A stretch of DNA of 63,485 bases, filler included, from Guillardia theta CCMP2712 (lineage: Eukaryota; Protista; Cryptophyta): assembly GCF_000315625.1 (NCBI RefSeq). It is 3 parts of 3 records of this genome, joined end to end, with 100 filler letters (N's around TTAATTAATTAA, not from the genome) between each part and the next. Parts side by side here need not be neighbours in the genome. Positions count along the whole stretch, not along the records: positions 36,152 to 63,485 come from NW_005434640.1; 2 more parts are not named here. One strand, given 5' to 3'. This document shows, one piece after another, positions 37,832 to 53,509 of the stretch. The notes beneath the pieces are model-generated. The model made no database searches. It had not been told where the DNA came from and worked only from the letters and a program-made list of their open reading frames with translations. The position numbers and the translations under genes were made by a program. Position 1 is the first letter of the stretch. Every line of letters starts with the position of its first letter.

Positions 37832-39549
37832 ATGGCTGAGACCAGCGCAGAGTTGCAGCTTCCCGAGGCCTGCCTGTGCCCCATTACCAGATGCGTCATG
37901 CAGGACCCCTACATGCTGGTCGACTCCGGTCACTCGTACGAGGGAGCAGCGATCCGCAAGTGGCTGGAGCGGAACTCCAGCGACCCATGCACGAACACCG
38001 AGGTGGGCAGCGAAGCAAACATGGTGCCGAACCATACTCTGAGGAGGCTCCTTGCGGACCTGCAAGATAGGATGCAGATGCAGAACTGGCTTCTCAGGAG
38101 AGAGGCGCAGGGAGCAGAAGGGTTGGTGATGGCAGATGCCCTCAAGAAGACGGAGAGGAAGGGAAGGAGGAGTAGAAGGGGAGGGGACAGCAGTGTCCCT
38201 TCCTTGGTGTACATCATAGTCGGTCAGATTTGCACTCTGACGACGCTGGTGCTGCACGAGGCGCTGCAGGCCCTGGCAGAGGAGACGATGAGCAGGAGAG
38301 TCGTTATCGTTCTCCTCCTGTTCCTCAACACGGCCGTGACGCTCCTAGTCGTGTGGCTGGTAAAGATCCTCGTCTTCCTCTTCCGCATCTTCCTCGATTA
38401 CCATGATAGCAAGGATGCGCAGAGCTCCAACGCCATAGCAGGAAGGAAGACTGAGGAGCTGGGAGGAGGAGAAGGAGGAAGGGTGGAGGCAACGAGGCGG
38501 CTGAGATGCTTGAGGACGATCAAGATGGAGAGCGGAGGAGGAGGCGTGCGGTCGTTGGGTGTCCGAGGAACGCGGTTGATCAGCATGGACAGCAAGTTCA
38601 ACATCAGATTGTGGGACCTGCGGACTTTTTCCTGCCTGCAGGAATTGAGGGGGGCAGCGAAGAGGTGTGGGCGATGGCGACGAGGGGGTCGAAGATCTTC
38701 CATGGAAAGTTTCTTCACAGGGTCCAGCTGCTGGACGGGGAGAAGGCGATGGGAGGAGAGGAGGAAGAGGAGAGAGGGAAGGAGGGGACGGGAGGAGGAG
38801 GGGGAGAGAAGAAGAACCAGAGTGGGGGGGAGGCGGGAAAGAGGAATCTGAGCAGACCCCAACCACTGGAAGCTCGTCCGCTGCCTGTGGTGTGTGGAGG
38901 AGGGTTCTACTTTGTGTCTACAGTGGATTGCAAGGTAGCAGTGCACCTGCGCTACGAGGCTTTCAACAGGCGGATGCAAGAGCTGCAGGGCCACGGGGGG
39001 TGGGTGAGAACGATCCTCTTCCTCCGATGTGGACATGGTTTGCTCGATCTGCAAGCTGGAGGAGAAGAGGAGGTCAGGTGGAGCGCGGATGAAGAGAATG
39101 AGGATGAAGGAGGACGAGGACGAGGACGAGAAGGGGGAGGAGGAGGAGGAGTGAGAATGTTGTTCACGGGCTCGGATGATGCCACGGTGAGGACCAGCTT
39201 GAACTGTGCTGCTGACGCTGACGAATGTCAGGTCCGCGTGTGGTACTTGGAGGAGGAAGAGGAGGGGCTGGTGATGAGGGACATGTGGCAGGCAGTAAGG
39301 GACGATAGAGGAAGGTCAGTCGTGCTGAGGGGACATCGGGGAGCTGTGCTGGGGTTGGCGGCGGCGGGAAGGTATCTGCTCTCGAGCTCTTACGATGGGA
39401 GCGTCAGGGTGTGGGGGATGGCGGCGGGGTGGGAATGCTTGCAAGTGCTGGAGGGGCACCGGGGGGCAGTGAATGAGGTGATAGTGCATGAGGGGATAGT
39501 GGTGAGCGGGTCGGAGGAGAGGGAGATCAAGGTGTGGGGATGGGTGTGA
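37832..39549 (+). CDS. U-box E3 ligase with hydrophobic/TM segment and WD40 repeats (one apparent frameshift near 38650)
   Basis: U-box LPEACLCPITRCVMQDP...SGHSYEGAAIRKWL...PCTN...MVPNHTLRRL; hydrophobic VVIVLLLFLNTAVTLLVVWLVKILVFLF; WD40 units IRLWDLRTFSCLQEL, LQGHGGWV, LFTGSDDAT|VRVW, LRGHRGAV...LLSSSYDGSVRVW, LEGHRGAV...VSGSEEREIKVW. In-frame 45-nt intron at ~39187-39231. Confidence 0.85.
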
Positions 39550-45110: not shown

Positions 45111-45832
45111 GACTGAGCCTCGGAACATTGATCGGAAGAGCCTCGAAGGGGGATAGGATACTGTATTTCCATGGCAGCCATCATGAATGAAACACACAAT
45201 ATACAAATATACCATGTCTTGTCACTACCGTACGGAAGCCACGCAAGTCCAACATTACCGTAACTTAATGAGTGACACCGGGCCCCCCACACCGGGCCCC
45301 CCACCGCCCGGCCGGGCCAAGTCCGGTGATCGGAGGCTCCGTACGGGCCGGGTATCCGCCGGCCGGCCGGCCCTCGACCGCCGGAAGTTGGCCGCGGCTC
45401 GCGGCCCTCCGAGTCAGCTTTACTCAAAGTCAGCCCGTCGGAGTCGCCCGGGATCTGCCGAGGCCTCCGAACTGGGCCGTCGTAACGGTCAAGTCCGGCC
45501 CGGAAATGCCTGGCGCGTGTATGAGGGGGATGCGCGAGTTCCTGTAGTAAACTTGTGTTGAGTGAAATATGGGCGGTAGTTGCCAGATCCGCACACTACT
45601 GGGGTAAACAAAAATCGCTAATGGGCGGAGGGAGGATGGGGTACTGACGGCAAGCCAAGCTCCTCCCCTGCGTCGATCGTTCTGGTTGGAGGGAGACAGC
45701 GAGCTTCAAGGAAGAAGCAGAACCACATACCAGGGCAAAGGCAGGGACTTGGGGAGGGACAAGACGCTGAGGCCGAGGTAGTAGCAGGAGGAACGGGAAT
45801 AGCACAGCGATTTTGACGACGATTCACCAGCC

Positions 45833-48800
45833 ATGATCGATAGGCCGGTGAGGTTTCCGATGCCCTCCTGGCGCTTTTTTATCCTGCTGGTACTGCTGAC
45901 GCTGTGCCAATCGGGAGTGAGAGTGAAATCCATGACGACATGGGTGCGGAGGTCAGACGCAAGGAATCTGTTGCAAGACATTGAGAAGGATGTTTGCAAT
46001 GGACTCTGGTTCGACTTTCGCTACCTGATAGGTGAGGGTCCCAAACATGAGTGAGTGTAGATGTATCTGATTTGTTGGGGTCAGGGAGGACGTATGAAAG
46101 CCTCTACGGGCCCTACGTGCTTTTTGAAGACGAAAAGACAACTTTCAAGCCATTGGAGAATGCTTCATTTTGTTCCATATTGAGCTTTGTAAAGGACTTT
46201 CTCATCACTTTTCCTTTCACTGACTTTGTTCTCACAGGCTGGAGTCAATTGCGATCCCATGAACGAGTTGGAAGGGATCAACAGGATAGTCGACAGCAAC
46301 CAGTGCTCCCTGATATTCAAGTACCTCCAGAGGCATCTGAACATGCACAAGATCAACCGGTGGCTCGAGTTATCTTCATGTGCAGCAGAGATGCACTCAA
46401 CTGAAGTTGTCGGCGACAAGAATCTCGAGATGGTGAAGTTCGAGCTCTCAAGGCATATGATGAGCTACCTGGTCCTTGACACCGACGTGAACGTGCCGCT
46501 GCTCTGCGGACTGTTCCATTCGCTCGTAGAGGATCCGGATTTGGAGCTCATTCCCAAGGACCAGGATGTTGGTGTTTGCAACAAGTCTGGCTCATATGCT
46601 TGCGCACCCAAGGACTGGCGGTGGTGCGACAATGCCACGTCATCAGAGAAGTCGTCAGTTGAGGTCATTTACTCCGACCTGCTGCAGTCCCAGCTGCAGA
46701 ACGTCAGAGACAAGATCCAGCAGTCTGTTGAAAAGTCCCTGAGGTCCCTGGTAGACGATGCTTTCTCGTGGGTGCTGGAGCGGGATCCCTCGGAGCAGGA
46801 GGAGGACTCGCTCGTGGCCCTGCTGCAACAAGGGAAGGATTTCAAGTACCTTGTACAGTACCTGCACTCCACCAAGGAGTACAGGATCAAGTGCGCAGCG
46901 GCATTCTGCACGGCCAACAGCAAGAAGGCGGTTGACAACGTGTTCCACGAAGTGCTGCTACGTCCCGCAGACCCGGTAGCACTCCGCAGGTACACGGACA
47001 TGCTGCACGATGGTTTCCATACCACGACGCTCCGCAAGATTCTCAAGGAGTCGGAGGAGTACAAGACCCTCTGCCTCAGAGACGGACTTTCTGTCTGCGA
47101 CAGCGCCCGCTCCATCGTCCGGATGATGTACCTCAAAGTGCTGGGACGGCACCCGGACCTCGGCGGGCTGACGGCGTACTCGCGGCAGCTCGTCCTGGGG
47201 AAGTTCACTGAGAGCCAGCTGCAGAACGAGCTGGAGAAATCAGATGAGTTTGTCAACGGGGCAGGGCTGAGGAGGAAGGCACTTTCCATCGTGGAGACGT
47301 TGAAGAGAGGGTATCAGGAGTGCTCCGACGCTCGCTTCACTGAGAACCCCTACTGGAACGGGCGATGGTGCGACAGGAGTGGGTGCGACGACAACTCCAG
47401 CGTTCCCTGCACGACTTTCCCTCTTGAGATGTACGCGCAGACTGAGATGGAGCTGGCGGGGGTCAACCCTTCGCTCCCCGCCAGTGAAGTGCGGAAGTTC
47501 GAGGAGCTGGTCAAGGTCGTGACCGAGGGCTACGTCCGCCTGCTGGGACGATACCCCGATCGAGGCTTCTTGATCTCCAACATGGGCAAGTACATGACGG
47601 GCGAAGCGTCCACGGACGGTCTGCACGATCAGTTGCTGTCGAGCCAGGAGCGTCAGGACAACCTCCAGCAGCGGTCGGAGGGGACGGCGAGGGCGGGTTG
47701 GATCGACAAGATCAACATACTCTCTAAGCTCATGATCCGCTACAACCTCTCCTTCCCGGAGGAGGTCGCCCACTGCTTCCGCTTCCAACCCCAGGGCGAC
47801 GTCACCTCTGACACCATCGCAGAGTTCATGGACTCCAGCACCAGTGATGGCAAGCTGCCCTGCCACAGCATCGGGAAGGTGCTCTCGACGCTCCAGGAAG
47901 CCTGGAACCAGCACGGCCCGCTGCTGGGCCTGCAGCAGGAGGAGGAGCCGATGCTCCCGATCGCCATGTACGTCAACGAGCGACCGCAGTACTTCCTGCA
48001 GGTTGTCAGGAGCCTGCAGGCGGTCCACAACATCCGCAAGGTTGCGGCGATTGTCATCTCGATGGACAGCGTCAAGGAGGAGATGCTGGACATTGCCTTG
48101 AGCATCGACTTTGCCCCTTCCGCATCATTTTCCACCCTGTCAACGAGGACCTGCTCAAGAATCAGCCTCTCCTCGCCATCAAGGTAATTGTGGTCGAGCT
48201 TGAACAACCCTCCTGATCCCCTTGCCATCTTCATCTTCTCTTTTCTCCTCCCCCTCCCTCTCTCATCTCATCTCATCTCATCTCATCTCATCTCATCTCA
48301 TCTCATCTCATCTCATCTCATCTCATCTCATCTCATCTCATCTCATCTCATCTCATCTCATCTCTTCCCCTCCCCTTCCATTTTCCTATCCCTCCACTCA
48401 ACTCATCTCCTCTCTCTTTCCATCCTATCCCCTTCTCTCCCCCCCCTTCACCTCCTCTCCCCTTCTCTCTCCCCTCTGACTCATCAACTCGCAGCTCCAC
48501 TGGATCTGGTTGCAGGACATGCTGTGGAACAACATTGCCGAGACGAGAGGATGGAAGGGAGACATCGCTCTGCTCGAGGAAGATCACGTGGTCTCGTCCG
48601 ACTACCTGGACTTGCTCAGCCACCTGGTCTACCTCAAGCAGCATCACTGCCCAAGGTGCTGGGGGGTGACTCTGCGCTGGGCTTGCATGCACTCCGATGA
48701 TGAGGACGGGACGAAAGTCTGCCGCAGTCACTCGGTGATCAACACCGGCATCGCCTTCAACCGATCCACGTCAGTATCCTCCCTCCTCCCTTGCCCTCCC

Positions 48801-49918
48801 TGCTGGTCCTCAGTGTTTCTGCCTCCCTCAATCCTTCTTTCCTCCTCTTCCTCTTTCTTGGCTGCCTGTTCCGCCTCAATCTGCTCGCCTTCCTTCTTCC
48901 CCTCTCTTCCCGGTTTTCTTTTTTAGCCTCTCTCTCATTGAGATTCTATTGATCTCCCTCTTCACGTTCTACATCTGCTGATCGTTTGCACCAGATACCT
49001 TGCAATCAAGAACAGCAACTTTGACTTGTTTGCTGATGGTTGGGACTGGTCTTTATTCCATCTCGCACAGGTAAACCCATTTAATCTCCTCCTCCTCCTC
49101 CTCCTCCTCCCTCCCCTCCCCTCCCCCCCCCTCCCCTCCTCTCCTCATCTTTCTCTCTCTCCTCCCTCCTCCCACCACACTATCATCCGCCTCCTTCTCT
49201 CCCTCCCTGGTCCATCCTCCTCCATCCTCCATCCTCTTCCTTCGGCAGCACATCTCACGGCAAACACATCAGACCGGGCAGATGCCTCCCATGATGATTG
49301 GCCCGGCTCTCTCGCGGGTTCGCAACGTAGGAAGGGAGGGAGTCACCGTTACTGAGAAAGGTCCCACCTGTTGCTCTTCCTCCTTCCTTTCCCCCCTCCT
49401 TGCTCTACCCTCTTCTGCCGTCTTCCGTCTGTTTCTCTTCCCCGCCTCCTTCTCTCCTCTCCCTCCACTGCCTGCTTCCCCTCCCCTTGTCTTTCCTCCC
49501 CCTCCCTCGCAGCGTCTGAGCTTCACCTCCAGGGGACGAGTTCTTGCAGCGACAACTTGAGTATGCAGTAGCCAAGAACTCCCAAGATTCTCTTCCTCTT
49601 GATCATCTTTGGATTGACAAGAAGGTTCCTCCTCTAACCCTGCTCCTCCTCCTCCCCCATCTCTCCTCCTCTCCTTCACTGCCTTACCTCGTTCCGTATC
49701 CGTCCCCTTCATCCGTCCTCATCCTCCTCATCCTCCTCCTCTCCCTACCTCCCTTCTCTTCCCCTCCCCCCTCCTTATTCTTGATCGAATCCTTGACGCT
49801 CTTCTCAGGATCGCAACCAGTTCACCCCTCCCATGTGGGAGCCCCTCTACCTGGGAGCAGGCATTGGGTTCCTTGCTCCTCAGGCGTGAATTTGCCGCCA
49901 CCTCACAAGACGCAGTGA
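45833..49918 (+). CDS. Type-II membrane protein with 4 DUF4214-like repeats fused to an MGAT2/GnT-II (GT16)-like domain (apparent frameshift near 48115)
   Basis: N-terminal TM WRFFILLVLLTLC; four repeats in the 46240-48183 exon; then PIAMYVNERPQYFLQVVRSL, IVISMD, IDFAP(FRIIFHP), K|LHWIWLQDMLW, IALLEEDHVVSSDY, LKQHHCPRC, NTGIAFNRS and DGWDWSL, colinear with MGAT2 motifs (VHNRPEYL, HHWWWK, LFLEEDH, CPEC, NMGLA, YNWDWTL). Confidence 0.82.
48262..48362. repeat. Intronic (TCTCA)n microsatellite
   Basis: Perfect pentamer run in the MGAT2-like gene intron 48184-48494. Confidence 0.95.
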
Positions 49919-50724: not shown

Positions 50725-53509
50725 ATGGTAGTCAAGACAAACATCGTCGTGGCACTTGATTGGACTCCAAACACTAATCACATCGGTGACATGTCCTTTC
50801 CTGATCCTCTCACTATGTCCGGAATCTCTCTGCTCTCATCCTCCCATTTCCTTGTTTTGCTGCCTTACTCCTCCTCGTCCCTCACTTCCCTTCCCTCCCT
50901 CGCCGTGTCCACTTTCCTCTTCGTCCTCCCTCCTCTTCTTCCTCTCTCCTCTTCTTCCTCTCTCCTCCTCTTCCTCTTTTCCTCTCTTCCTCTCTTCCTC
51001 TCTTCCTCTCTCCCGCTCTTCCTCTCTCCCGCTCTCCCTCTCACTCGCTTCTAAACTATCCGCAGGCATCTTTGTTGCTCAGTCCCTAGGGCTCTACGAC
51101 AAGGCCAACCTGCAGGCAGCGAGCTGTCGAGGGTCCAGGTAGCAACTGACGCCCATGTCCAGGTGGACGCGATCTCCCCGGATGCTGACTCTTACGCCAA
51201 GACGCCGAGGAGGAGGTAGTGCGTTGCTCCATGGTTGTGCTGAGACGACGATGATGTGTTCCTGTGGGAAGGGTCGAGGAGAGGACGGCGCACTTTGGGG
51301 TCTGCCCGTCGGAGACTGTTATCAGCTGCCATGCACATGGCGAAGGAGGGGCGGGAGCGTCGAGGATCGTGGCTGTGGCTGCGATCCTGCAGCAGCAAAC
51401 CTCGGCGATTGTCACATTGAAGGTGGGGAGAGGTTGAGGGAGAGAGAGGAGGCAGAGGAGAAGGGAGGAGAGGAAAGGGAGAGAAAGGGGAGAGAAGAAA
51501 GAAGGGAGATGAGGAGAGAAAGGGGAAACAGGAGATGTGAGGCGAGGAGAAAGGAGACAGAAGCTAAGGCGGCAGTGGCTGTGACGGTGATTGCTGTAAA
51601 GGAGAAAGGAAGGACAGTCTTTAGATTGAGACTTTTCAGGCGCTATCATTCTATTCGCCCTCCGACCTCCTCTTGATCAAGTTCTCTCTCCCTCTCCCTC
51701 GTGCTCTTCCTCGCCCTCGTGTCATTCTCGTCCTTCCTCTCCTCTCCTGCCCTGCCTTTCTCCTCCTCTTTCCTGCACTTCACTGATCTTCTCCTGCAGT
51801 CGAGTGGAGTGGACAGGCCTGCAAAGCTGGATGGACGGAAGTACGCGTCCTACGAAGGGAGATTCGGTGACAGGAAAGGATCTTTCACTCTTCCTCTGAT
51901 GTGCAGCTTGCAGAAATGGATATCGTGCGGCAGCTGATTTGCGATGATGGCGGGAAGGGAGAGGTAGACTCCGATCCTGTCCTCTCCTCTCTTGGGTCCT
52001 GTCTTGTCTATACCTCCCCTCTCTCCCACTCCCTCTCCCTCTCTCTCTTCCTCTCCCTCTCCCTCTCCCTCACCCTCGCCCCTCCTTTACTCTCTTAGCA
52101 GTTCTTTCAAAGCTCTACAGGTGGAGGAAGTGAGGCATGGTGAACATGGACTCGGAATCTTCAACACCCTTGTTCAACATCCTGAGGTCTTTCGCTTCCT
52201 CCTCCGCCTCCTCCTTTTTCCTTCCTCCTCCTCCTCCTACTACTACTACTACTTCTCCTCCTCTTCCTCCTCCTCTTCCTCCTACACCTCTTCCTCCTTC
52301 TCCTCCTCCTCCTTCTCCTCCTCAACTTTCGCCTCCTCCTCCTCCTCCTCCTCCTCCTCAACTTCTTCGTCCTCCTCAACTTCCTCCTACACCTCTTCCT
52401 CCTTCAATGTGAGCTTGTGCTTCAGGTCTACGACGCTACATGGGTTTTCATGCCGTGGGAAGGAGTGATTGCAAGACAGAGTGGCATCGAGCTTAACGTA
52501 GGAGAGAGGAGGAGGTGGAGGAACTTTCACCGAGGGATGGAGAGTGGAAGGAGACGAGGAAAGTGAGCAGGAACAGGAGGATGGAACTGTAAATATGAGA
52601 ATGAAAACAGCTGGGACGAGGACAAGGAGAAGAAGGGAGAGGAGGACAAGGACAGCGAGGAGGACAACGAAGGAGGAAGAGGAAGAGGAAGAGGAAGAGG
52701 AAGAGGAAGAGGGGCAGGGAGAGGAAGAGGGAAAGGGAGAGGAAGAGGGAAAGGGAGAGGAAGAGGAATGGGTCGCTCATCCTTTGGCAGGTTTTCGGTC
52801 TGGAGGATGTTCCCTACGGCTACACCCCCATCCTCATCTCTCATCTCGACACCCTCGCTGAGCTGGGAGAAGACGCTCGGCGTTTCCTCAAGGTCCTCCT
52901 CTCCCACCCCCCACTTACGAAACATTCTCACACCTCCCTCCTCCCTCCTCCCTCCNNNNNNNNNNNNNNNNNNNNNNNNNNNNNNNNNNNNNNNNNNNNN
53001 NNNNNNNNNNNNNNNNNNNNNNNNNNNNNNNNNNNNNNNNNNNNNNNNNNNNNNNACTTTACCTTCCTCCGTCCCTCCCTCCCTCCCTCCTCCCTCCTCC
53101 TCCTCCTCCTCCTCCTCCTCCTCCTCCCTCCTATTCGCCACGACAGCGTGGGGGGAGATGAAGCTGGAGAAATGGAAGGCTTTTACCGACTGGCTAGAGA
53201 GCAACAATATCATCAAAGGTAAGGAGATGGTAGACGGCCTGAAGGGGAGGTGGCGAGGTCGGAGAGGAACAGCAACAGGAGCAGAGAGGAGAAGAGGAAG
53301 AAGGGTTTGGGAAGGAGCAACAGAGCAGGAGAGGGAAAGAAAGCAGGAGAGAGGACTGAGGAGGTTGGGAAGGAGGAGACTGGGAAGTTTTGAATAGGAG
53401 AAGAGGAGGGAGAGGAGGGAGGGATGAGACTGATTCAGCTTCAGATCGAGAAGGAAAAACTCTCCCTGCTCCGGATCCAAAGCTTCTCTTCACCAACGAC
53501 TACCTGTAG
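50725..53509 (+). CDS. NMT1/THI5/SsuA-like (ThiY-type) pyrimidine-precursor binding protein; contains a gap
   Basis: IVVALDWTPNTNHIG|IFVAQSLGLY, ISPDADSYAKTP, VAVAAILQQQTSAIVTL, RPAKLDGRKYASYEGRF|EMDIV, DATWVFMPWEGV, VPYGYTPIL, WGEMKLEKWKAFTDWL and LFTNDYL*. Confidence 0.88.
52956..53055. other. Assembly gap (100 N) inside the THI5-like gene
   Basis: Run of 100 N. Confidence 0.95.

What the first reader, a model, noticed from the sequence alone, without database searches (positions are those of the whole stretch)
45833..49918. GnT-II (MGAT2)-like glycosyltransferase with a long luminal stem of bacterial-style DUF4214-like repeats
Seen: between the N-terminal TM and the GT16-like domain are four ~45-aa helical repeats: VDDAFSWVLERDPSEQEEDSLVALLQQGKDFKYLVQYLHSTKEY, VDNVFHEVLLRPADPVALRRYTDMLHDG...ILKESEEY, VRMMYLKVLGRHPDLGGLTAYSRQLVLG...LEKSDEF and VTEGYVRLLGRYPDRG...LLSSQE. 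Known: the V-x-x-x-Y-x-x-V/L-L-G-R-x-P-D...S-x-E-Y/F pattern defines DUF4214, found in bacterial surface-layer proteins and glyco/methyltransferases, and resembles the LLGRAP...SxEY motif of the phycobilisome linker domain. Canonical MGAT2 has only a short stem. Inference: this is an unusual Golgi-type GlcNAc-transferase carrying a repeat interaction module of possible bacterial or cyanobacterial origin.
Basis: partly seen in the sequence, partly recalled or inferred. Interest (0 to 1): 0.75.

Follow-up and report, generated by a model that had tools for sequence, protein, structure and literature searches.

The report
Cryptophyte GT16 glycosyltransferase carrying DUF4214 repeats
This is a real, expressed gene of the alga Guillardia theta that joins four helical DUF4214 repeats, otherwise mainly bacterial in the matches here, to an MGAT2-like (GT16) sugar-transferase domain. 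The fusion is conserved in cryptophyte algae, but the enzyme lacks two hallmarks of true GnT-II, so its substrate is open.

Summary
Window 45833-49889 (+) is an 8-exon Guillardia theta gene whose 953-aa product matches an MMETSP transcript exactly, apart from one codon. That codon is broken by a 1-nt deletion in the window's C-run at 48114-48117; DNA and RNA runs all carry the extra C. RNA-derived contigs splice exons 1-3 and run from the repeats into the catalytic domain, so it is one transcript.

The four repeats are homologous DUF4214 units. Pfam hits repeats 2 and 3 directly; profile comparison links repeats 1 and 4 (probability 98%). The C-terminal domain is a GT-A fold closest to human MGAT2 (Pfam 97 bits; Foldseek E 1e-16). 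It keeps the EED motif and the catalytic Asp. It lacks the MGAT2 loop-helix-loop insert, has Asn where MGAT2 has the Mn-binding His, and falls in a clade separate from canonical MGAT2.

That clade holds the DUF4214 fusions (two Guillardia paralogues, Hanusia and a metagenomic cryptophyte) and a partial Baffinella-cluster fragment whose full-length member scores below the DUF4214 threshold. The phycobilisome-linker resemblance is suggestive only. No close bacterial donor was found.

Best reading: a secretory-pathway GlcNAc-type transferase with a non-catalytic DUF4214 binding or scaffold array. GnT-II function is unproven.

The parts
45833..46031 (+). Exon 1: start ATG, N-terminal hydrophobic segment (h-region 45875-45907, 11 residues) and the start of the conserved Cys-rich N-terminal domain
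   Evidence: The MMETSP ORF P0155 starts here. RNA contigs X4 and X6 skip 46032-46084, GT..AG. The exact translation matches.
46085..46188 (+). Exon 2 (104 nt), part of the N-terminal Cys-rich domain
   Evidence: Both flanking introns (53 nt and 49 nt, GT..AG) are skipped in RNA contigs X4 and X6 but not in DNA contig X1. The region is conserved in the Hanusia transcript.
46238..48183 (+). Exon 3 (1946 nt in the window, 1947 in reads): rest of the N-terminal domain, all four DUF4214 repeats, a helical linker and the first part of the GT16 domain
   Evidence: RNA contigs run unbroken from 46238 to 48183 and then jump to exon 4. Pfam finds DUF4214 and MGAT2 on this exon.
45947..46726 (+). Conserved Cys-rich N-terminal domain of unknown fold (P0001 residues about 30-255; the span includes introns 1 and 2)
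   Evidence: It is conserved in P0002, P0003, P0004, P0009, P0028 and P0069. It has no Pfam match, no PDB sequence match and no Atlas match above noise.
46745..46897 (+). DUF4214 repeat 1 (degenerate in G. theta)
   Evidence: hhalign against the repeat-3 profile gives probability 98.1%, E 7e-14. Orthologous repeats hit Pfam DUF4214 in 4 of 7 relatives. The model shows a 4-helix unit with pLDDT 85-93.
46925..47077 (+). DUF4214 repeat 2
   Evidence: Pfam DUF4214 gives 17 bits for this repeat alone. hhalign against repeat 3 gives probability 98.0%.
47111..47269 (+). DUF4214 repeat 3 (best match)
   Evidence: Pfam DUF4214 gives 30.1 bits, E 5e-7, for this repeat alone.
47282..47512 (+). Helix plus Cys-rich segment (conserved W-x-G-R-W-C-x-R-x-G-C motif) between repeats 3 and 4; fold unknown
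   Evidence: It is conserved across relatives. Model pLDDT is 37-53 over most of it.
47513..47665 (+). DUF4214 repeat 4
   Evidence: hhalign against repeat 3 gives probability 98.1%, E 1e-13. Region HMMs cross-hit.
47672..47941 (+). Helical linker and N-terminal helices that pack on the GT domain
   Evidence: It is conserved in the family. It is modelled as helices, with pLDDT 83-95 for the first 30 residues and 60-66 for residues 31-60.
47942..49886 (+). GT16 (MGAT2-like) GT-A catalytic domain, spread over exons 3-8
   Evidence: Pfam MGAT2 gives 97-102 bits. phmmer against human MGAT2 (5vcm) gives E 4e-13. The AF2 model has pLDDT 87 and pTM 0.89. Foldseek gives 5vcs/5vcm at E 1e-16.
48114..48117 (+). 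C4 run that is C5 in all reads: a 1-nt deletion in the window that breaks codon Pro728 and shifts the frame
   Evidence: read laying reports 'put in behind 48113: C' in DNA contig X1 and in RNA contigs X4 and X6. The flanking translations match P0155 exactly and leave one Pro with only CC in the window.
48495..48769 (+). Exon 4, with the EED (DxD-type) motif at 48576-48584
   Evidence: The loose ends of RNA contigs after 48183 read the first letters of this exon. E and D are invariant in 45 GT16 sequences. Translation checked.
48995..49070 (+). Exon 5, with the W-D-W motif at 49041-49049 (Asp equivalent to the human MGAT2 catalytic base D347)
   Evidence: Alignment to 5vcm. D347 is described as the catalytic base in PMC7014118. 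Nearly invariant W275/D276.
49273..49360 (+). Exon 6; Asn at 49324-49326 occupies the position of the human MGAT2 Mn-binding His374
   Evidence: Alignments. Canonical MGAT2 rows have His there; the whole fused clade and its insert-less relatives have Asn.
49533..49624 (+). Exon 7
   Evidence: Exact translation match to P0155. Colinear with the intron-less homologue P0003.
49809..49889 (+). Exon 8 and stop codon TGA at 49887-49889
   Evidence: Exact translation match to the end of P0155.

Best explanation
Shown:
- Window 45833-49889 is one expressed 8-exon nuclear gene of Guillardia theta CCMP2712 with a 953-aa product.
- The product has, in order: an N-terminal secretory signal (signal peptide or short anchor); a Cys-rich domain of unknown fold of about 220 aa; three consecutive DUF4214 four-helix repeats; a Cys-rich knot; a fourth DUF4214 repeat; a helical linker; and a C-terminal GT-A glycosyltransferase domain of CAZy family GT16.
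- The catalytic domain keeps the EED metal/UDP motif and the catalytic Asp. It lacks the MGAT2 loop-helix-loop insert and has Asn instead of the C-terminal Mn-binding His.
- The gene belongs to a clade of DUF4214-GT16 fusion paralogues, distinct from canonical MGAT2. Every member whose source could be identified is a cryptophyte.

Inferred:
- The protein works in the lumen of the secretory pathway or at the cell surface. The evidence is the signal sequence, 24 Cys and 6 sequons.
- It is probably an inverting UDP-sugar transferase, most likely a UDP-GlcNAc beta-GlcNAc-transferase acting on a mannose-type acceptor, like its three nearest solved relatives MGAT2, GnT-I and POMGNT1.
- Its acceptor recognition differs from GnT-II.
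- The DUF4214 array is a non-catalytic module that binds or scaffolds the substrate, probably a glycan or surface glycoprotein. This would be analogous to the lectin stem of POMGNT1 and to bacterial DUF4214 modules attached to extracellular carbohydrate-active enzymes.
For: Identity and expression:
- Cluster members name G. theta fragments GUITHDRAFT_152628 and GUITHDRAFT_152629 and a 953-aa MMETSP ORF.
- RNA-derived contigs of about 3.1 kb splice introns 1 and 2, run through exon 3 and continue into exon 4. The DNA contig is unspliced.
- The spliced exons equal P0155 apart from the broken codon.

Domains:
- Pfam finds MGAT2 and DUF4214. The repeats are homologous to each other. The stem model shows a 4-helix unit per repeat.
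- All 10 listed Atlas rows (one per domain set, out of the 30 nearest models) are DUF4214 proteins, mostly with another domain: cellulase, amidase, hexosaminidase-associated or RTX domains among them.
- The GT model is closest to human MGAT2, then GnT-I and POMGNT1.
- EED and WDW are conserved; the LHL insert is absent; His is replaced by Asn.

Family:
- Proteins in which a DUF4214 repeat was detected lie in one clade of 10 rows, SH-aLRT 95, apart from a 26-row canonical clade that includes a millipede and a dictyostelid MGAT2.
- Members passing both Pfam thresholds: two Guillardia paralogues, Hanusia, and P0003, whose contig carries a neighbouring gene closest to Rhodomonas and Hemiselmis. 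The Baffinella protein P0196 has MGAT2 at 97.5 bits but DUF4214 at only 17.2 bits, under the threshold.

Literature:
- MGAT2 uses insertions in HV1 and HV3 for acceptor contacts (PMC7948508). I infer that HV1 is the LHL insert.
- POMGNT1 has a lectin domain N-terminal to its catalytic lobes (PMC7014118).
- The RTX-DUF4214 protein Psh binds LPS O-antigen (bioRxiv 10.64898/2026.09.02.748959).
Against: - No biochemical data exist for any member of this clade. Donor and acceptor are inferred from homologues with only about 20% identity.
- Loss of the LHL insert and of the His does not prove a different acceptor. From memory, not checked here, GnT-I has no His at that position and is active.
- The ligand-binding role of DUF4214 rests on analogy. 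In the one preprint on its function, the role of the DUF4214 part is the authors' suggestion, not a demonstrated binding site.
- The repeats could be a rigid spacer or an oligomerisation device instead.
- I could not check whether G. theta has a separate canonical GnT-II, a GnT-I or a Man II.
- Signal peptide versus signal anchor was judged by eye and by hydrophobic-run length, not with a dedicated predictor.
Confidence: 0.55

Rival explanations
1. It is the cryptophyte orthologue of GnT-II (MGAT2). It adds the second beta1,2-GlcNAc to the alpha1,6-mannose arm of N-glycans in the Golgi, and it merely has an unusually long, decorated stem.
For: - Pfam MGAT2 is the only catalytic family hit (97 bits), and human MGAT2 is the best structural match.
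- The EED motif and the catalytic Asp are conserved.
- UniRef names the fragment L1JAI0 and the paralogue L1JC85 as this enzyme.
- Algal GnT-II with a large N-terminal fusion has a precedent in the diatom Man II/GnT II protein (PMC12507850).
Against: - The domain falls outside the well-supported canonical MGAT2 clade.
- It lacks the loop-helix-loop insert, and the review PMC7948508 lists HV1 among the acceptor-contacting insertions of MGAT2.
- It has Asn for the Mn-binding His.
- The clade holds several groups (a second Guillardia paralogue, a branch with the Baffinella-cluster fragment), which is unusual for a single-step housekeeping enzyme.
- The database names are automatic.
Confidence: 0.25
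2. The DUF4214 array has no ligand. It is a rigid helical spacer or oligomerisation stalk that holds the catalytic domain away from the membrane or assembles the enzyme into multimers.
For: - The model shows a regular array of small helical units.
- Golgi glycosyltransferases commonly have stems that mediate oligomerisation (general knowledge).
- No conserved pocket or binding residue has been identified.
Against: - The repeat motifs are conserved between proteins that share only 26% (BLASTP) to 38% (alignment) identity.
- In bacteria the module recurs on secreted enzymes that act on polysaccharides or cell walls and on an O-antigen-binding protein. This suggests more than a spacer.
- In the cryptophyte members the N-terminus looks like a cleavable signal peptide. 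There may then be no membrane to stand away from.
Confidence: 0.15
3. The fusion is an artefact: two neighbouring genes (a DUF4214 protein and a GT16 enzyme) wrongly joined, or a pseudogene, as the frameshift in the window and the fragmented NCBI models might suggest.
For: The window has a frameshift at 48114-48117. NCBI annotates only two partial pieces.
Against: - All runs laid over this place, DNA and RNA-derived, carry the missing C.
- Repeats and the start of the GT domain lie in the same exon.
- RNA contigs cover the whole ORF.
- The intron-less homologue P0003 has the same colinear architecture in a single ORF.
Confidence: 0.02
4. The repeat module was acquired recently from bacteria or cyanobacteria, for example from a phycobilisome linker gene, by horizontal or endosymbiotic transfer.
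For: - The DUF4214-only neighbours that could be placed look bacterial: Atlas clusters with recorded taxa are all Bacteria, and one of two contigs inspected (L004) has a bacterial-looking gene neighbourhood; the other (L003) was not informative.
- Foldseek ranks phycobilisome linkers first.
- Relatives give sub-threshold PF00427 hits.
Against: - The word-based search of the repeat region found only the protein itself and Hanusia.
- The fusion is shared by divergent cryptophyte paralogues, so it is old.
- PF00427 does not hit this protein. PDB linker sequences reach only E 0.18.
- In an unbiased structural search, linkers (Z 4.3-5.2) do not stand above unrelated helical bundles.
Confidence: 0.05

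Closest known systems
Human MGAT2 / GnT-II (CAZy GT16; PDB 5VCM, 5VCR, 5VCS)
   Same: Same Pfam family (PF05060) and the best structural match (Foldseek E 1e-16, about 20% identity). It shares the GT-A fold, the EED motif, the K/H-W-W helix and the catalytic Asp in W-D-W.
   Different: The G. theta domain has no loop-helix-loop insert (human residues 181-224) and has Asn instead of His374. It sits in a separate clade. It carries about 650 aa of folded N-terminal domains instead of a short stem.
POMGNT1 (GT13) with its N-terminal lectin stem domain (PDB 5GGI)
   Same: It is a GT-A beta1,2-GlcNAc-transferase of the same structural superfamily (Foldseek E 6e-12). Its catalytic domain is preceded by a non-catalytic lectin domain (PMC7014118). 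This is the closest functional analogy for a binding module followed by a catalytic domain.
   Different: The accessory domain has a different fold (a lectin domain, versus helical DUF4214 repeats). POMGNT1 belongs to the GT13 family, not GT16. The analogy is an inference, not homology of the accessory parts.
Diatom bifunctional Man II/GnT II (Phaeodactylum tricornutum, 1453 aa)
   Same: It is an algal GT16 domain at the C-terminus of a long fusion protein expressed as one transcript (PMC12507850).
   Different: The fusion partner there is a GH38 mannosidase with an obvious pathway logic, and the GT16 part is reported to keep the human GnT-II catalytic residues. Here the partner is a repeat module of unknown function.
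Bacterial DUF4214 proteins: RTX-DUF4214 Psh of Pseudomonas putida, and DUF4214 fused to cellulase, amidase or hexosaminidase-associated domains
   Same: Same Pfam repeat (PF13946), and these are the nearest predicted structures (all 10 listed Atlas rows). The module is attached to secreted enzymes or surface proteins that deal with polysaccharides. Psh binds O-antigen.
   Different: These proteins are prokaryotic, carry different catalytic partners and are exported by other routes such as T1SS. No eukaryotic or GT16 fusion is discussed in the papers found.
G. theta paralogue GUITHDRAFT_138613 (UniRef L1JC85, 840 aa) and the Hanusia phi and Baffinella frigidus homologues
   Same: Same family. 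The Guillardia paralogue and Hanusia pass both Pfam thresholds; the Baffinella protein has MGAT2 at 97.5 bits and DUF4214 at 17.2 bits, under the threshold. Hanusia shares 68% identity; the paralogue's GT part shares 45%.
   Different: The paralogue has three detectable repeats and a truncated model. None of these proteins has been studied, and their names are automatic.
Phycobilisome linker domain (Pfam PF00427)
   Same: One DUF4214 repeat superposes on the C-terminal half of the linker domain (Z 4.3-5.5, rmsd 2.0-2.8 A over 56-62 residues). They share L-G-R-x-P and S-x-E-Y-like motifs. Relatives give sub-threshold PF00427 hits.
   Different: This protein gives no PF00427 hit, and the similarity is not above background in the unbiased search. 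From general knowledge, not tested here: cryptophytes have no phycobilisomes. No functional link is implied.

Membership tests
GT16 / MGAT2 (Pfam PF05060) | Profile match above the curated threshold | tested here: met
   97.1 bits against a threshold of 27, E 1.5e-27. Profile positions 23-80 and 136-314 are matched.
GT16 / MGAT2 (Pfam PF05060) | GT-A fold closest to solved MGAT2 | tested here: met
   The AF2 model has pLDDT 87 and pTM 0.89. Foldseek gives 5vcs/5vcm/5vcr at E 1e-16 to 1e-15, ahead of GnT-I (7e-13) and POMGNT1 (6e-12).
GT16 / MGAT2 (Pfam PF05060) | EED (DxD-type) metal/UDP motif | tested here: met
   L-L-E-E-D-H lies at 48576-48584. E and D are invariant across 45 sequences.
GT16 / MGAT2 (Pfam PF05060) | Catalytic base Asp (human D347) | tested here: met
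   The Asp in G-W-D-W aligns with the Asp of N-W-D-W in 5vcm.
Canonical GnT-II (functional MGAT2) | C-terminal His that coordinates Mn2+ (human H374) | tested here: not met
   Asn occupies that position (49324-49326). The canonical rows shown in the alignment have His; the fused-clade rows and insert-less relatives shown have Asn. That H374 is the Mn ligand is from my own knowledge; the primary paper was not held.
Canonical GnT-II (functional MGAT2) | Loop-helix-loop insert (human 181-224), the GnT-II-specific element (PMC7014118). HV1 insertions contact the acceptor (PMC7948508). | tested here: not met
   Pfam profile positions 81-135 are unmatched. The alignment shows no insert between the H-P strand and the K-x-H-W helix.
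Canonical GnT-II (functional MGAT2) | Placement inside the clade of known animal and amoebozoan MGAT2 | tested here: not met
   The canonical clade has 26 rows with support 96. The query lies in the other half, in a 10-row clade with support 95. The tree is midpoint-rooted, built with the quick method, and has no GT13 outgroup.
Canonical GnT-II (functional MGAT2) | Transfer of GlcNAc to the alpha1,6-Man arm of GlcNAcMan3GlcNAc2 | not testable with these tools
   This needs an enzyme assay.
DUF4214 (Pfam PF13946) | Profile match above the curated threshold | tested here: met
   39.6-41.8 bits against a threshold of 23.2. Repeat 3 alone scores 30.1 bits.
DUF4214 (Pfam PF13946) | All four proposed units are homologous repeats of this type | tested here: met
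   hhalign gives probability 98% for repeats 1, 2 and 4 against repeat 3. Repeat-1 orthologues hit PF13946 in 4 of 7 relatives.
DUF4214 (Pfam PF13946) | Predicted fold like other DUF4214 proteins | tested here: met
   All 10 listed ESM Atlas rows (one per domain set, out of the 30 nearest models) carry PF13946. TM-scores are low (0.22-0.34) because the repeat arrangement differs.
Phycobilisome linker (Pfam PF00427) | Profile match above the curated threshold | tested here: not met
   This protein gives no hit. Relatives P0028 and P0045 score 18.9 and 16.6 bits against a threshold of 28.7.
Phycobilisome linker (Pfam PF00427) | Structural similarity that stands above background | tested here: inconclusive
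   Foldseek's top matches are nearly all linkers, but with E of 0.01 or more. VIA gives Z 4.3-5.5 over one repeat. In the unbiased search, unrelated helical proteins score the same.
Type II Golgi membrane glycosyltransferase | N-terminal signal-anchor transmembrane helix | tested here: inconclusive
   The uncharged hydrophobic run is 11 residues here, 9-12 in P0002, P0006 and P0028, and 20-22 in P0003, P0009 and P0011. No dedicated signal-peptide predictor was available.

The most novel reading that the evidence does not exclude
The DUF4214 array is a lectin-like, glycan- or surface-polymer-binding module. It would direct a GT16-type GlcNAc-transferase to a substrate other than the N-glycan core, for example glycoproteins of the cryptophyte periplast or cell surface. 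Cryptophytes would then have expanded a GT16 subfamily with a new acceptor specificity. The fusion would also give the first eukaryotic, experimentally tractable handle on what the widespread DUF4214 domain, and perhaps its phycobilisome-linker relatives, binds.
Probability: 0.2. Interest if true: 0.6.

Novelty: new variant of a known kind. Interest (0 to 1): 0.4.

Why it matters
- DUF4214 is a widespread domain whose function is poorly characterised. A conserved fusion to a well-understood catalytic fold gives a testable guilt-by-association clue that it binds glycans or a substrate.
- For algal glycobiology, the automatic 'GnT-II' labels in cryptophytes hide a divergent, expanded GT16 subfamily. 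It lacks an MGAT2-specific insert that probably contacts the acceptor. N-glycan pathway predictions based on BLAST hits to GnT-II would therefore be unsafe for this lineage.
- The finding exposes a homopolymer error in the G. theta reference, which may be why the public annotation holds only two fragments of the gene.

Tried and rejected
- The primary MGAT2 structure paper (PNAS 2018) is not held. Residue roles come from two reviews and, for His374 as Mn ligand, from my own knowledge.
Only 45750-48255 was laid, so introns 4-7 have no direct read evidence. They rest on exact identity to the MMETSP ORF and on colinearity with the intron-less P0003.
- Raw RNA run X22 gave only 3 reads, so nothing can be said about expression level.
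- The word-based search of the repeat region found only the protein itself and Hanusia. This is a limit of that tool and does not show that relatives are absent.
- The N-terminal domain has no PDB sequence match and no Atlas feature hit above noise (0.78).
- The unbiased VIA search did not single out phycobilisome linkers, so I lowered that claim.
- Literature searches for Guillardia N-glycan enzymes found nothing specific.
- I did not type or submit a joined spliced model. Exons were searched by reference. Full-length analyses used the database proteins P0001 and P0155 returned by the tools. Exon joining was only checked locally against P0155, with the broken codon left out.

Full report
**What is there**

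The finding lies in a eukaryotic, intron-containing stretch. A 653-codon open frame (46226-48187) holds the quoted repeats. On that exon Pfam finds DUF4214 (41.8 bits, threshold 23.2) and the start of MGAT2. The next exon gives a further MGAT2 piece.

A word-based protein search returned three proteins:
- P0001, a 944-aa JGI protein identical to the exon;
- P0002, a Hanusia phi transcript product with 68% identity;
- P0003, a 1072-aa metagenomic protein with 26% identity by BLASTP over 94% of the query (38% in the full-length alignment).

All three were precomputed as PF05060 plus PF13946.

Cluster look-up identifies the organism as Guillardia theta CCMP2712. NCBI holds only two fragments of this gene: GUITHDRAFT_152628 (partial) and GUITHDRAFT_152629 (UniRef L1JAI0, auto-named MGAT2). 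An MMETSP transcript encodes the full 953-aa ORF (P0155), starting at the ATG at 45833.

**Gene model and expression**

The exons are 45833-46031, 46085-46188, 46238-48183, 48495-48769, 48995-49070, 49273-49360, 49533-49624 and 49809-49889 (stop TGA at 49887-49889). All introns are GT..AG. Joined, they translate exactly to P0155 except for one codon, Pro728, for which the window has only two letters, CC.

Laying public runs on 45750-48255 gave three results:
- Two RNA-derived contigs (3155 and 3093 nt, from different studies) skip introns 1 and 2. They run unbroken through exon 3 and then continue with the first letters of exon 4.
- A DNA contig from an independent 2021 run has no such joints.
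- All three carry one extra C behind 48113.

The window, that is the reference assembly, therefore has a 1-nt homopolymer deletion. The gene is intact. Repeats and catalytic domain are on one mRNA; indeed the repeats and the first 80-odd residues of the GT domain share one exon.

Introns 4-7 were not covered by reads, because the intron-3 microsatellite blocked the first request. They rest on the exact match to P0155 and on colinearity with P0003. P0003 is encoded by a single uninterrupted ORF on its contig.

**The repeats**

- Taken alone, repeat 3 scores 30.1 bits and repeat 2 scores 17 bits against Pfam DUF4214. Repeats 1 and 4 are not hit.
- I aligned each repeat position across 7-11 relatives and compared the profiles. 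Repeats 1, 4 and 2 match repeat 3 with probability 98% and E 7e-14, 1e-13 and 2.5e-13.
- Orthologues of repeat 1 hit PF13946 directly in 4 of 7 relatives, best E 6e-7.
- An AlphaFold2 model of residues 250-580 (14-row alignment, mean pLDDT 77; 85-93 over repeats 1-3) gives each repeat as a four-helix unit: one long, one medium and two short helices.
- The segment between repeats 3 and 4, with a conserved Cys-rich motif, is poorly modelled.
- In the ESM Atlas, all 10 listed rows (one per domain set, out of the 30 nearest models) are DUF4214 proteins, and all 9 with recorded taxa are bacterial. Most carry a further domain, among them a cellulase, an N-acetylmuramoyl-L-alanine amidase, hexosaminidase-associated domains and RTX repeats.

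**Phycobilisome-linker resemblance**

Evidence in favour:
- Foldseek against the PDB ranks PF00427 linker structures almost exclusively at the top, but with E of 0.01 or more.
- VIA-align superposes one repeat on the C-terminal half of the linker domain, with Z 4.3-5.5 and rmsd 2.0-2.8 A over 56-62 residues.
- Two relatives give sub-threshold PF00427 hits.
- A repeat-3 profile finds four linker chains among six weak PDB hits, best E 0.18.

Evidence against:
- In an unbiased search of 48,161 chains, linkers (Z 4.3-5.2) do not stand above unrelated small helical bundles.

The relationship is plausible. A preprint lists DUF4214 proteins under the Gene3D phycobilisome-linker superfamily. It is not demonstrated here.

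**The catalytic domain**

- The full protein scores 97 bits on Pfam MGAT2, but only over profile positions 23-80 and 136-314.
- phmmer finds human MGAT2 (5vcm, E 4e-13) and, weakly, POMGNT1.
- A model of residues 575-944 (45-row alignment) has pLDDT 87 and pTM 0.89.
- Its best PDB matches are human MGAT2 (E 1e-16), GnT-I (7e-13) and POMGNT1 (6e-12).
- The EED motif and the Asp aligned with the human catalytic base D347 are conserved.

Two MGAT2 features are missing:
- The loop-helix-loop insert is absent. The review PMC7014118 describes human residues 181-224 as specific to GnT-II. PMC7948508 lists HV1 insertions among the MGAT2 acceptor contacts. That HV1 is this insert is my inference.
- The His aligned with human H374 is Asn.

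Both differences are shared by the fused-clade rows and the short insert-less GT16-like rows shown in the alignment, for example one from Ancoracysta twista.

**Family**

An exhaustive profile search found 1755 hits at E below 1e-3. Region-specific HMMs sorted the top 150 into three groups:
- full or fragmentary DUF4214-GT16 proteins;
- GT16-only proteins;
- DUF4214-only proteins with many repeats, one of which sits in a bacterial-looking neighbourhood.

A maximum-likelihood tree of 55 GT16 domains puts the proteins in which a DUF4214 repeat was detected in one clade of 10 rows with SH-aLRT 95. That clade is separate from a 26-row canonical clade (support 96) containing a millipede and a dictyostelid MGAT2. 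The 10-row clade also holds three short fragments and one 546-aa protein with no detected repeat. The tree is midpoint-rooted and has no GT13 outgroup.

Members with an identifiable source are all cryptophytes:
- Guillardia, with two paralogues, the second being GUITHDRAFT_138613 (L1JC85);
- Hanusia;
- Baffinella frigidus (955 aa; MGAT2 97.5 bits, DUF4214 only 17.2 bits, under the threshold), whose cluster is represented in the tree by a 278-aa fragment;
- P0003, on whose contig the neighbouring aspartate-semialdehyde dehydrogenase is closest to Rhodomonas and Hemiselmis.

Another member, P0157, lies on a compact eukaryotic contig next to lipin and MTP18 genes.

**Topology**

The N-terminal uncharged hydrophobic run is 11 residues here and 9-12 in Hanusia, the paralogue and P0028. 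It is 20-22 residues in P0003, P0009 and P0011. In Hanusia the run is followed by A-R-A-Q-S, which looks like a signal-peptidase site (reading). I take the cryptophyte proteins to enter the secretory pathway, supported by 24 Cys and six N-x-S/T sequons. I leave open whether they are anchored or soluble.

**Interpretation**

What is shown is an expressed, conserved fusion of a DUF4214 repeat array with a divergent GT16 catalytic domain. The function is inferred.
- The three nearest solved enzymes all transfer GlcNAc in beta1,2 linkage to a mannose. A UDP-GlcNAc, mannose-directed inverting transferase is therefore the best guess.
- Without the insert and outside the canonical clade, the GnT-II acceptor cannot be assumed.
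- For the repeats, the bacterial contexts point to a binding or scaffolding role towards glycans. These contexts are secreted polysaccharide- and wall-active enzymes and the O-antigen-binding RTX-DUF4214 protein Psh.
- The lectin stem of POMGNT1 is a precedent for such an arrangement in this enzyme superfamily.
- The diatom Man II/GnT II fusion shows that algal GT16 domains do occur in long fusion proteins.

**Novelty**

None of the ten papers that mention DUF4214 appears to concern eukaryotes or GT16, judging by titles and abstracts; only one was opened. No paper was found on cryptophyte GT16 enzymes. Databases already tag the paralogue and this protein with both Pfam domains, so the architecture is recorded but undescribed. 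I rate it a new variant of a known kind, of moderate interest.

Noticed in passing
window 48114-48117: The reference sequence has C4 where an independent DNA run and two RNA-derived assemblies have C5. This 1-nt homopolymer deletion creates a false frameshift in the GT domain. It may explain why NCBI annotates only two fragments of the gene (GUITHDRAFT_152628 and GUITHDRAFT_152629).
   Followed up: yes
window 48184-49808 (introns 3-7): Introns 3-7 are 79-85% C+T on the coding strand. They contain a perfect (TCTCA)x21 microsatellite at 48261-48364 and CTC-rich arrays at 49086-49172 and 49709-49738. This explains the strong negative GC and AT skew of 48-50 kb. Introns 1 and 2 are tiny (53 and 49 nt) and are not skewed in this way.
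   Followed up: partly
window 37832-39546 (+): The upstream neighbour encodes a U-box domain (E 4e-10) followed by WD40 repeats, with the Prp19 WD40 model among the hits. It looks like a Prp19-type splicing/ubiquitin ligase gene. The two ORFs overlap in different frames, which suggests an intron or another assembly indel.
   Followed up: no
P0019 (Closterium sp. Naga37s-1, CAI5516046.1, 1481 aa): A charophyte protein carries two tandem GT16 domains with the canonical insert, followed by a long C-terminal region of another kind. It is a different, unrelated GT16 fusion.
   Followed up: no
L003 663-5189: A metagenomic contig has two adjacent genes for multi-repeat DUF4214 proteins, with faint or weak Sulfotransfer_2 and PBS_linker_poly hits. 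This is another pairing of DUF4214 with a carbohydrate-modifying family.
   Followed up: no
P0013 cluster (546 aa; contigs up to 64 kb): A member of the fused clade has no detectable DUF4214 repeat. It has a low-complexity, Pro/Arg-rich insertion of about 200 aa in the middle of the GT16 domain. This could be a mis-called intron or a real insertion.
   Followed up: no
window 50836-51142 and 50914-51042: Downstream of the gene lies another C+T-rich (TTCCTCTC)n array. It produces long spurious ORFs on both strands and is not part of this gene.
   Followed up: no
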